DNA of 64,000 nt from NCBI GenBank assembly GCA_030704615.1, contig CM060732.1:22258001-22322000 (forward strand), read 5' to 3'. The translations under genes and the position numbers were made by a program. Each line of letters starts with the position of its first letter. The stretch's first letter is position 1. The notes under the pieces are model-generated. The model searched no databases and was not told where the DNA came from. It worked only from the letters and a program-made list of their open reading frames with translations. The DNA is from Takakia lepidozioides. Taxonomy: Eukaryota > Plantae > Bryophyta. This document shows, in pieces, positions 39,914 to 41,751 of the stretch.

Positions 39914-41751
39914 CTAGACTACTTTGTTGAAGACTCTGCGGCGAAGCAGCTCGGCAGATGCACATCTGTCTTTGGCCTCGAACTGCTTTGTCTCGTAGCA
40001 CTTAGCGCGACATATCGTCCCCATCTGCAATCTGCTCAATGTTCGAAATCTTGTTAAGCTAAATGTCTTAAACTGAGTTCACATGGATAGCAAGAAGAGA
40101 GGAAGAATTGGGAAGAATATGCAAATGCAGATATTATTAGTACTCCATACATTCCTCGAGCAACAACAACGAGAGGCAATCTACACGTACTCCTGCAACA
40201 GATGGTACCTGGCTGGTATGGAGGCTTCTATGCCAGCTGCACATGCCACGTCTTCGATCTGGCAAGGTAAACTACGGTCAAAGGCCTTGATAGCGTGCTT
40301 ATCCCCTTCCACCACCTTCAAATGTGCCACTTGGTGTGATAGGCAAGCGATTTTCTCACCCTGCGGTTTTAATATAAATCGATTTCTGACTGTCAGTATT
40401 GATTCATGTGAAGATTTCATGGAGTACTGGACAATCCCCAAAAATGATGAGCAAGTAGTACTACCTCTGAAAATCATAAAGGACTAACTGCACGAATTAC
40501 CACCATAAACTCACCGCGCACTTGGCACAACATCCTATGAAGAGCTGAGCACAAGCATCGTTTGCCTTGCATGCCTGGAAATACAGGTCGTTTGCCTTCT
40601 TAAGCGCCACCTGTAATAGCTCTCCAACAGGATTTCAAATCAGTTCACACATTATAGCCGACGGCAGGACTGGGTACTTAATTGTAATGAACAAACTGCG
40701 TCATTAAGAAAATCCAAGCAAGGTTGTGGATATACCTTGAATACGGCCAGAACCTTACTGAAAGCGTGGAGCACATCAGAAGAATCCTTGGTTGGTTGTG
40801 GAAATACCTTGAATACGGCCAGTGCCTTACTGAAAGCGTGGAGCACATCAGAAGAATCCTTAGTTGCGCACCAATCGGCATTAACCTGAGCAGTAGGCCC
40901 AATTTCCACTTTCGCACCGCGTTTGGTGAGGAAATCGATGACCAGCCAACTATCGTTTACCTCAACCTGTGACAGTATCTGGTGGACAAAACAATATGGA
41001 GATGATCAATCAAGAGCCGAACTAATAACAACATTTGTGAGTACCTACTCCTTTAAACTCCTTACCTGTAGCATTATCTGGTAATAACTCATGACATATT
41101 CAGCCTTAAGCATAATGTAGAACTTTACATCTCCTGCACGGACTAACCTTGAAGTACAATGCTACACCGGGAAGCGCCACATTGTCATGACTGAAATAAG
41201 CGGATGCGGCAGCGCAAAGTGCTGCAACATTGTAGTGATATCTGCAAGATGTTAATGTGCAGACCAATTAGTGAAATCGAGTCATGCTCGCTACTCTTCC
41301 AATAGCCACGGCCGTAGGAACGTGATCAGTACTACAATTGCCGTAACGATGCTCAAAACAGTGTACAACTTCAGGTCCAAATAATCTGAGTAACGTACGT
41401 CATGCACTTGTTGAGGGCATCATCGATCTCAGCACTTGCTTGCGGAGTGCGTGCCAACGACGCACTGATATCACCCACTCTAACGGATTTGATCATCTCC
41501 ATCTCCTTCTTGATCTGCTTCAGATTTATATGAGGTAAGTTGCAGTACGGGGCAAGTTATGCCGAACAACACAAGGCTGACAGTTACTCCATTACTGTAA
41601 GTATCATGCAATCCTAAGTATAGGAATATAGCACTTGGATTAAGTATCTTGACGTTGAAGGCGGCGCGGTCATATGCTCAGCATATTAAGGAAATAATAC
41701 CTCCTCCATGTAAGGGAATTCCTCTGTCTGAACGGCTGCGCTGCGTGCCAT
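39914..41751 (-). CDS. Diverged ferritin-like protein, 7 exons, about 265 aa (start and last exon less certain)
   Basis: complement(join(39914..40031,40209..40360,40515..40610,40808..40978,41148..41241,41399..41514,41701..41751)), all GT-AG, phases consistent, 798 nt. It aligns by eye with plant ferritin: EEIKKE...ASLAR (extension peptide), YNV...AYFSHDNVALPGVALYFK, KRGAKV, DVLHA...LAVFK, ND...FI, VAHLKVV...HAIKAFD. Confidence 0.8.
40736..40865. repeat. Tandem duplication (72-bp period) of the 3' end of ferritin-like exon 4 including its splice donor
   Basis: TKDSSDVLHAFSK(A/V)LAVFK|GTAT occurs twice, with exon ends at 40808 and 40736. Confidence 0.9.

What the first reader, a model, noticed from the sequence alone, without database searches (positions are those of the whole stretch)
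39914..41751. Hidden ferritin-like gene lacking the ferroxidase centre and apparently the plastid transit peptide, with a Cys-rich tail
The gene is invisible in the ORF track but assembles into 7 phase-consistent exons. By-eye alignment to ferritin (human H numbering) gives E27->H, Y34->C, E61->V, H65->D, E107->F and Q141->A, with only E62 kept. The plant extension peptide (EEIKKE...ASLAR) is retained, the likely ATG is only about 15 codons upstream of it, and about 60 extra C-terminal residues plus many Cys are added. An intact frame and splice sites despite this divergence imply selection for a non-iron-oxidising role, such as a cytosolic cage, binding of another metal, or a structural or regulatory subunit (inference).
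Basis: partly seen in the sequence, partly recalled or inferred. Interest (0 to 1): 0.8.

Follow-up and report, generated by a model that had tools for sequence, protein, structure and literature searches.

The report
Tailed, iron-site-less moss ferritin gene
An intact seven-exon gene in a moss-like genome encodes a plant-type ferritin that has lost its iron-oxidising site, its iron channel and its chloroplast address and has gained a conserved 58-residue tail. It belongs to an apparently unstudied family of mosses and land-dwelling green algae, but no transcript was found for this copy.

Summary
On the minus strand, 41751..39914, seven GT-AG exons give one open 798-nt frame of 265 aa. Full-length relatives match exons 2-7 colinearly. 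Their mRNA contigs are uninterrupted exactly at my junctions, and introns 2-6 share place and phase with a Sphagnum magellanicum gene.

The protein is a plant-type ferritin that keeps the extension peptide but has no transit peptide. At the ferroxidase centre it has E27H, Y34C, E61V, H65D, E107F and Q141A, and only E62 is kept. Both three-fold-pore carboxylates are gone. A 58-residue tail follows the ferritin domain.

It belongs to a conserved clade: Sphagnum, Coleochaete, the trebouxiophytes Myrmecia and Asterochloris, and unnamed transcripts. It keeps 49 of 54 family-conserved positions and its branch is not long, so it has been under constraint.

Cysteine richness is copy-specific: 14 Cys, 7 of them unique. 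Also specific to this copy is a 72-nt in-frame duplication across the exon-4 donor.

No RNA run held this gene. Function is inferred: a non-plastid cage or chaperone, analogous to artemin.

This scan found the same family earlier at two other loci of this genome (s1-469980, s1-459954). I found no paper on it.

The parts
41701..41751 (-). Exon 1: ATG plus 16 codons, ending EE, phase 0. It carries the family N-terminal motif FP-x-M-E-E and no transit peptide.
   Evidence: Across the junction, the motif and its spacing match the N-termini of relatives (FPAMDEI...). No upstream in-frame ATG precedes the stop near 41945.
41399..41514 (-). Exon 2: the extension-peptide region (IKKE...ASLAR) and the start of helix A. 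It ends in a split Thr codon (phase 2).
   Evidence: tblastn with P0061 residues 11-53, E 1e-8. Donor AC|GTACGT. The Sphagnum gene has an intron at the same place and phase.
41148..41241 (-). Exon 3: helix A, with E27H and Y34C, and the SAYFSHDNVALPGVALYFK block.
   Evidence: 75% identity to P0061. Alignments.
40808..40978 (-). Exon 4 (57 aa): helix B with E61V, E62 kept and H65D; the long loop; helix C with E107F.
   Evidence: E 1.6e-18 to P0061. 59 library hits; about a dozen single-stretch ones are relatives and exon fragments, the rest repeat proteins. The Sphagnum gene has the same 57-codon exon.
40722..40866 (-). 72-nt tandem duplication (2 copies, 94% matches) covering the last 51 nt of exon 4 plus 21 nt of intron 4. 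It creates a second, in-frame donor after 40736, and using that donor would insert 24 residues.
   Evidence: TRF and sequence reading. Relatives' mRNAs pass from exon 4 straight to exon 5 without the extra 24 residues.
40515..40610 (-). Exon 5 (32 aa): helix D. The three-fold-pore carboxylates are replaced (D131L, E134G), Q141 is A, and there is a CC pair.
   Evidence: Donor GCG|GTGAGT. The Sphagnum gene has the same 32-codon exon.
40209..40360 (-). Exon 6: end of helix D, helix E (SH..HLK.VE.DKHAIK.FDR), and the first 19 tail residues from 40267 downwards. It ends in a split Arg codon.
   Evidence: E 1.7e-15 to P0061. The Sphagnum gene has an intron at the same place and phase.
39914..40031 (-). 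Exon 7: the rest of the 58-residue tail, ending RRRVFNKVV, then TAG.
   Evidence: tblastn E 4.5e-6 to P0012 and 4.9e-4 to P0061. The end motif R..FN.V is shared by the family.

Best explanation
This is a real, structurally intact member of a conserved clade descended from plant-type (extension-peptide) ferritin. It is the sixth copy in this genome if the scan's earlier notes are right.

Shown here:
- The clade has lost the plastid transit peptide.
- It has lost the di-iron ferroxidase centre; only E62 survives, with Asp at position 65.
- It has lost the acidic three-fold iron pore.
- It has gained a tail of about 57 residues that is as conserved as the core.

Inferred:
- The protein stays outside the plastid.
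- It still folds as a ferritin subunit and probably assembles into a ferritin-like shell.
- It cannot take up and oxidise iron by the canonical route.
- It works through its conserved tail, which follows helix E. In ferritins and in artemin, that point faces the cavity.
- The most likely role is a stress-linked cage or holdase-type chaperone, analogous to brine-shrimp artemin.
- This copy has added many thiols, which would suit redox control.
For: - Exon model and open frame.
- Colinear homology of exons 2-7 to 17 full-length relatives.
- Junctions are contiguous in the mRNA contigs L002, L003 and L004.
- Introns 2-6 share place and phase with the S. magellanicum gene L001.
- The relatives pass Pfam PF00210 (27-36 bits against a cut-off of 24.5).
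- Their best solved matches are plant ferritins (6j4j, 3a68, E 1e-17), and the alignment runs through the extension peptide.
- In the AF2 model of P0061 (pLDDT 84.8), residues 7-206 align with soybean SFER4 at Z 23.5, rmsd 1.9 A, 193 residues.
- Ligand and pore substitutions.
- 49 of 54 conserved columns are kept, within the 82-100% range of accepted members.
- The end branch is 0.37, equal to the median, and its path from the node it shares with the other moss members is the shortest.
- pN is 0.31-0.42 against pS 0.70-0.79; dN/dS is 0.23 where it can be estimated.
- In the tail, 13 of 55 positions are at least 90% conserved, the same share as in the whole protein.
- Artemin's published features are a modified ferroxidase centre and three-fold channel, 45-50 extra residues with the C-terminus in the cavity, and 10 Cys with a proposed redox switch: PMC9742257.
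Against: - No sequencing run on record as RNA held the stretch. The two small runs with the same species label laid nothing. That is weak, but the scan's notes call the other copies transcribed.
- This copy changes the one Arg that all 17 relatives share (FSRDN to FSHDN), the PP before DW (to VN), RR (to RS) and PFE (to PCQ).
- Cys replaces aromatic or aliphatic residues that the family keeps.
- The 72-nt duplication offers a second donor. Using it would insert 24 residues into helix C.
- Shell assembly, tail position, location and any chaperone activity are untested.
- The tail in the model has pLDDT of only 52-73.
- The likeness to artemin is by analogy. The nearest sequences and structures are plant ferritins, and artemin is not among the listed matches.
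Confidence: 0.6

Rival explanations
1. A silent or recently disabled paralogue. The frame is still open, but the copy is no longer expressed or no longer folds, and it is beginning to decay.
For: - No RNA holder was found.
- Five of 54 conserved positions are lost, including the one Arg that all 17 relatives keep and the PP motif.
- Seven unique Cys sit partly at conserved hydrophobic positions.
- A young 72-nt duplication lies across the exon-4 donor.
Against: - No stop or frameshift in 265 codons, and six canonical GT-AG introns.
- 91% of constrained columns are kept, as in accepted members.
- The branch is not lengthened and is the shortest path among the moss members.
- Exon and intron GC differ as in working plant genes.
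- The gene sits in a genic stretch, head to head with an intact PPR gene and not inside a transposon.
- Both donors of the duplication keep the frame.
Confidence: 0.22
2. A re-tooled metal or redox site. The former site A (His27, Glu62, Asp65), together with this copy's Cys34 and the CC pair on helix D, binds another metal (Zn, Cu, Cd or a single Fe) or forms a thiol switch. The protein would then be a non-plastid metal buffer or sensor rather than a chaperone.
For: - Glu62 (16 of 17), the Asn before position 65 (15 of 17) and Asp65 (14 of 17) are kept across the family (E-x-N-D). His27 is kept in mosses and Coleochaete.
- 11 of 17 relatives have a Cys within one column of the helix-D CC pair.
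- This copy adds Cys at position 34, next to the old centre.
Against: - Site B is replaced by Val, Phe and Ala, and the entry pore by Leu and Gly, so there is no obvious route for ions.
- His27 is not kept in the chlorophyte members.
- No geometry was tested. The gap near positions 134-140 leaves helix-D numbering uncertain by one residue.
Confidence: 0.12
3. A non-catalytic subunit that co-assembles with canonical ferritin, as the animal L chain does with the H chain, and tunes iron storage.
For: The ferritin fold and the dimer-forming helices are retained in the family model. L chains also lack the ferroxidase centre (established knowledge).
Against: - There is no transit peptide, whereas canonical plant ferritin is plastidial (established knowledge), so the partners would be in different compartments.
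- Helix B, which in L chains carries nucleation carboxylates, is largely hydrophobic here.
- A 58-residue tail on each subunit would take up cavity space.
Confidence: 0.06

Closest known systems
Plant ferritin (phytoferritin), e.g. soybean SFER4 (PDB 3A68) and H-2 (6J4J)
   Same: They are the best sequence and structure matches of the family. The four-helix bundle plus helix E is shared. The N-terminal extension-peptide helix is retained, and so is the RDNVAL block.
   Different: - No transit peptide.
- Six of the seven ferroxidase-centre residues are changed.
- The three-fold-pore Asp and Glu are replaced by Leu and Gly.
- The protein continues for 58 residues where plant ferritin ends.
- Relatives reach Pfam PF00210 only weakly, and single exons of this gene do not reach it at all.
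Artemin, the ferritin-derived diapause chaperone of Artemia (cryo-EM structure, PMC9742257)
   Same: It is a ferritin homologue with a modified ferroxidase centre and three-fold channel. It is 45-50 residues longer than ferritin, with a C-terminal extension, and it is thiol-rich (10 Cys against 14 here). It occurs in an organism that survives drying.
   Different: - Independent origin: this family descends from extension-peptide ferritin of green plants, and artemin is not among the listed matches.
- The tails are unrelated as far as tested (no Pfam or atlas match).
- The cysteines are not conserved in the plant family.
- No chaperone or RNA-binding data exist.
Animal L-chain ferritin
   Same: A ferritin subunit without a working ferroxidase centre.
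   Different: L chains keep cavity-facing nucleation carboxylates, have no tail, and co-assemble with H chains in the same compartment. None of this is seen or shown here.
Desiccation-related proteins with a ferritin-like domain (pcC13-62 / DRP, Pfam PF13668), expanded in lichen algae
   Same: They carry the name 'ferritin-like' and are linked to desiccation. They occur in terrestrial trebouxiophytes, which also carry the present family (PMC9434271).
   Different: It is a different Pfam family. The relatives tested here hit PF00210 only and not PF13668, even at E up to 1.

Membership tests
Ferritin (PF00210), eukaryotic H-type / phytoferritin | Four-helix bundle plus short helix E (ferritin fold) | tested here: met
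   Tested on the closest relative, P0061 (54% identical): AF2 pLDDT 84.8, Z 23.5 to soybean ferritin over 193 residues. The window exons align to it column by column. The window protein itself was not folded.
Ferritin (PF00210), eukaryotic H-type / phytoferritin | Score above the Pfam gathering cut-off | tested here: inconclusive
   The six exons scanned singly (2-7) gave no hit. Relatives score 27-36 bits against a cut-off of 24.5. The joined 265-aa model was not scanned, because no reference exists for it.
Ferritin (PF00210), eukaryotic H-type / phytoferritin | Di-iron ferroxidase centre (E27, Y34, E61/E62, H65, E107, Q141) | tested here: not met
   The residues here are H, C, V/E, D, F and A, so only E62 is kept.
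Ferritin (PF00210), eukaryotic H-type / phytoferritin | Acidic three-fold entry pore (D131, E134) | tested here: not met
   Leu and Gly (or a gap) occupy these columns.
Phytoferritin | N-terminal extension peptide | tested here: met
   The HMMER alignment of P0061 to SFER4 starts in the extension peptide (FEPFEEVKKE...ASLAR). The window has FPYMEE|IKKE...ASLAR, and the model has a helix at residues 11-22.
Phytoferritin | Plastid transit peptide | tested here: not met
   The ATG lies 17 codons before IKKE, with no upstream in-frame ATG. Sixteen of the 17 relatives start within about 20 residues of the same point. No targeting predictor was available.
Ferritin | 24-subunit shell that stores an iron core | not testable with these tools
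   No multimer prediction or biochemistry was available.
Tailed, ferroxidase-less ferritin clade of mosses and green algae (unnamed) | Full-length colinear similarity and conserved family positions | tested here: met
   41-54% identity to all 17 members over about 243 columns, with 49 of 54 conserved columns kept. It falls with the moss members in the tree, with weak support.
Tailed, ferroxidase-less ferritin clade of mosses and green algae (unnamed) | Conserved tail of about 57 residues (LP-x-x-x-E...AAG-x-E..IP-x-RL..G...RA...R..FN-x-V) | tested here: met
   Exons 6 and 7 carry these motifs up to the last residue.
Tailed, ferroxidase-less ferritin clade of mosses and green algae (unnamed) | Shared intron positions | tested here: met
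   All five introns of the S. magellanicum gene coincide in place and phase with introns 2-6 here. This gene has one extra intron after codon 17.
Tailed, ferroxidase-less ferritin clade of mosses and green algae (unnamed) | Transcribed and spliced | tested here: inconclusive
   Relatives exist as uninterrupted contigs of 1.0-1.4 kb. For this copy no run on record as RNA was listed, and two small runs laid nothing.
Artemin | Descent from the arthropod ferritin lineage / sequence kinship with artemin | tested here: not met
   The best PDB sequence and fold matches are plant and algal ferritins. Artemin is not among the 60 sequence rows or the 50 fold rows shown.
Artemin | C-terminal extension inside the cage; thiol-dependent holdase activity | not testable with these tools
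   A tail and 14 Cys are present. Their position and activity are unknown.
DRP / Ferritin_2 (PF13668) | Match to PF13668 | tested here: not met
   No such hit for four relatives at E up to 1, nor for the window exons at E up to 10.

The most novel reading that the evidence does not exclude
Mosses and land-dwelling green algae independently evolved a counterpart of artemin: a non-plastid ferritin shell whose conserved tails fill or gate the cavity, and which acts as a stress (drying or oxidation) holdase. This cysteine-enriched copy, with Cys34 and the helix-D CC pair beside His27, Glu62 and Asp65, would be a thiol-switched or soft-metal-binding specialist within that family.
Probability: 0.2. 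Interest if true: 0.8.

Novelty: new variant of a known kind. Interest (0 to 1): 0.55.

Why it matters
Ferritin in green plants is treated as a plastid iron store. Here a ferritin lineage has been kept from chlorophyte algae to mosses after losing everything needed for iron handling, and it has gained a conserved tail. The ferritin shell has therefore been put to another use in plants. The only studied parallel is artemin, which protects brine-shrimp cysts during drying.

The named carriers are Sphagnum, the streptophyte alga Coleochaete and the trebouxiophytes Myrmecia and Asterochloris (the latter a lichen alga). I found no hits from vascular plants, Physcomitrium or Marchantia in the searches run. 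That distribution makes a link to stress tolerance testable.

For this locus the practical value is a checked gene model for a gene that ORF tracks miss, plus a clear warning that its expression is unproven.

Tried and rejected
- **Pfam on single exons:** no hits, because the pieces are too short and too diverged.
- **RNA evidence:** the run search listed no RNA holder. The two runs with the same species label laid nothing. This is no proof of silence.
- **Library search with exon 4:** 59 hits at E 0.001 or better. Most of the listed hits, the multi-stretch ones, were long repeat proteins matching a QVNADW..S motif several times. I treated these as chance or low-complexity likeness and set them aside.
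- **A candidate exon at about 41070-41137** (DVKFYIML...): it would be out of frame or bring a stop, and no relative matches it. Rejected.
- **Read-through of intron 6** (ending ...YHLLQEYV): rejected, because the family end motif lies in exon 7 and Sphagnum has the same intron.
- **Closer relatives for dN/dS:** the metagenome scan gave 31 loci, none more than 58% identical in exon 4. Synonymous sites are saturated.
- **Tail alone:** no Pfam family, no atlas look-alike above chance, and not covered by any fold match.
- **Scan notes by sequence:** blank, which means nothing.
- **Joined model:** the joined 265-aa model was not sent to any search, family scan or structure tool, because it has no reference. 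It was put together only inside scripts from the window file, for counts, NG86 and the tree.

Full report
**Observation**

Reading the minus strand of 39700-42100 in three frames and locating the splice motifs gives seven exons:
- exon 1: 41751-41701
- exon 2: 41514-41399
- exon 3: 41241-41148
- exon 4: 40978-40808
- exon 5: 40610-40515
- exon 6: 40360-40209
- exon 7: 40031-39914

A script that read the window file confirmed 798 nt, 265 codons and one terminal stop. It also confirmed six GT..AG introns of 154-197 nt, with exon GC 50.9% against intron GC 40.3%. The ORF list shows only fragments, so 'invisible in the ORF track' is fair.

**Support for the model from relatives**

A library search with exon 4 alone, by reference, found about a dozen single-stretch hits that are relatives: full-length proteins of 258-302 aa and shorter exon fragments. 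Further searches brought the set to 17 full-length proteins.

tblastn of these proteins against the whole window hits exons 2-7 in order. For P0061 the matched residues are 11-53, 53-84, 83-141, 138-168, 174-226 and 222-260. Nothing else in the 64 kb is hit convincingly.

In the contigs L002, L003 and L004 the frame is uninterrupted. There my exon pieces lie end to end, separated only by the two split codons. So the junctions are those of real mRNAs, and the 24 extra residues of the local duplication are absent.

The annotated Sphagnum magellanicum gene (L001) has five introns. All five coincide in place and phase with my introns 2-6, including exons of exactly 57 and 32 codons.

Intron 1 is extra here. 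Exon 1 is supported by the family N-terminal motif, which reads correctly across the junction: FPYMEE|IKKE against FPAMDEIHEE and similar.

**What the protein is**

The relatives pass PF00210 weakly, at 27-36 bits against a cut-off of 24.5. Their best solved matches are plant ferritins (6J4J, 3A68/3A9Q, E about 1e-17), and the alignment begins inside the plant extension peptide.

An AlphaFold model of P0061, built on the family alignment, has pLDDT 84.8. Its residues 7-206 superpose on soybean SFER4 at Z 23.5, rmsd 1.9 A, over 193 residues. Residues 207-260 match nothing and have pLDDT 52-73.

The metagenome scan also returned canonical algal ferritins with intact centres. Aligning these with the family and the window exons shows every change directly:
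- E27 to H
- Y34 to C
- E61 to V
- E62 kept
- H65 to D
- E107 to F
- Q141 to A
- the pore pair D131/E134 to L and G (or a gap)

Canonical ferritins end within a few residues of FD..L. This protein goes on for 58 more.

The start is 17 codons before IKKE, with no earlier in-frame ATG. Sixteen of the 17 relatives start within about 20 residues of the same point. So there is no transit peptide. Location outside the plastid is an inference from that.

**The family**

The named members come from:
- Sphagnum jensenii and S. magellanicum
- the streptophyte alga Coleochaete scutata
- the trebouxiophytes [Myrmecia] bisecta (three genes) and Asterochloris

The rest are unnamed transcript-like contigs of 0.9-1.8 kb, plus one metaclust entry with no contig on record.

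No vascular plant, Physcomitrium, Ceratodon or Marchantia protein appeared in these searches. The searches are word-limited, so this is not proof of absence.

In a 12-sequence alignment of full-length members (A3), 13 of 55 tail positions are at least 90% conserved. That is the same share as for the whole protein. Glu62 (16 of 17), the Asn before position 65 (15 of 17) and Asp65 (14 of 17) are kept across the family, and His27 is kept in the streptophyte members.

I found no paper on this family. The 'ferritin-like' desiccation proteins of lichen algae are a different Pfam family, PF13668.

This scan had already noted the same family at two other loci of this genome: a pair (s1-469980) and a cluster of three (s1-459954). 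I used those notes as leads. I re-derived the family, its range, the lost sites and the tail independently. I could not see their loci or check their claim of transcription.

**Is this copy alive?**

For:
- The frame and splice sites are intact.
- 49 of 54 family-conserved columns are kept; accepted members score 82-100% on the same test.
- The end branch of 0.37 equals the median. Its path from the node it shares with the other moss members is shorter than theirs (0.6-1.0).
- pN is 0.31-0.42 against a saturated pS of 0.70-0.79; dN/dS is 0.23 against Sphagnum.
- The gene lies among ordinary genes, not inside a transposon.

Against:
- No run on record as RNA holds it.
- It changes the Arg that all 17 relatives keep, the PP motif and three other conserved positions.
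- Seven of its 14 Cys are unique, and some replace conserved Phe or Leu.
- A young 72-nt duplication (94% matches) spans the exon-4 donor. It offers a second in-frame donor that would insert 24 residues into helix C.

I put a silent or decaying copy at about 0.2.

**Mechanism**

Shown: the canonical route for iron is gone (pore, di-iron site, acidic helix B), while the fold-defining positions and a long tail are conserved.

Inferred: a ferritin-like shell or dimer outside the plastid that acts through its tail. By ferritin geometry the tail begins where helix E points into the cavity.

The closest working analogy is artemin. Artemin is a ferritin homologue with a modified ferroxidase centre and three-fold channel, and it is 45-50 residues longer than ferritin. 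Its C-terminus lies in the cavity. It has ten cysteines and a proposed redox switch (PMC9742257). This is analogy and not kinship, since the nearest relatives of the family are plant ferritins.

Two alternatives are kept as rivals: a re-tooled single-metal or thiol site at His27/Glu62/Asp65 plus the cysteines, and an L-chain-like partner of canonical ferritin.

**Limits**

- The joined 265-aa model was never sent to a search, family-scan or folding tool, because it has no reference. All such searches were run exon by exon or on relatives.
- The join was made only inside scripts, for counts, NG86 and the tree.
A neighbouring polyketide-synthase exon is closest to Sphagnum proteins at 70% and to other bryophytes at about 50%. 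This fits a moss not held in the protein collection.

Noticed in passing
window 40722-40866: A 72-nt tandem duplication (2 copies, 94% matches) of the exon-4 end plus the intron-4 start. It gives two equivalent GT donors, both in frame. It may produce an isoform with a 24-residue insertion.
   Followed up: partly
window 42627-45053 (+): An intronless 808-aa pentatricopeptide-repeat (PPR) gene lies head to head with the ferritin-like gene. Its ATG is 875 bp from the ferritin-like ATG, so the two may share a bidirectional promoter.
   Followed up: partly
window 36157-37185 (-): A large exon of a chalcone-synthase-like type III polyketide synthase. Its best named hits are Sphagnum jensenii (70%) and S. 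balticum (65%). Liverworts and other mosses are at about 50%, so this looks like a lineage-restricted PKS clade.
   Followed up: partly
window 38851-38923 (+): A tRNA-Asp (GTC) gene about 1 kb beyond the 3' end of the ferritin-like gene.
   Followed up: yes
window 48132-50255 (-) and 50368-51912 (+): A Ty3/gypsy-type pol ORF (RT, RNase H, integrase) lies next to a tnp2 (CACTA-type, Transposase_21) transposase ORF. A PHD-finger ORF lies at 47292-47945.
   Followed up: no
window 39843-39877: A perfect 17-nt tandem repeat (2.1 copies) just beyond the stop codon, in the likely 3' UTR.
   Followed up: no
L018-L031 (metagenome contigs): Canonical, ferroxidase-intact algal ferritins share the RDNV(A/G)LPG motif with the tailed family, whereas the soybean ferritin in the PDB alignment has ALRG at that point. 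This hints that the family branched from an algal-type ferritin.
   Followed up: partly
P0001, P0002 and other long hits: Exon 4 residues 28-48 (QVNADW..SDVLH) resemble a repeated QVNADWDATSG..ILNKP unit in very long repeat proteins of unknown origin. I take this as chance likeness.
   Followed up: partly
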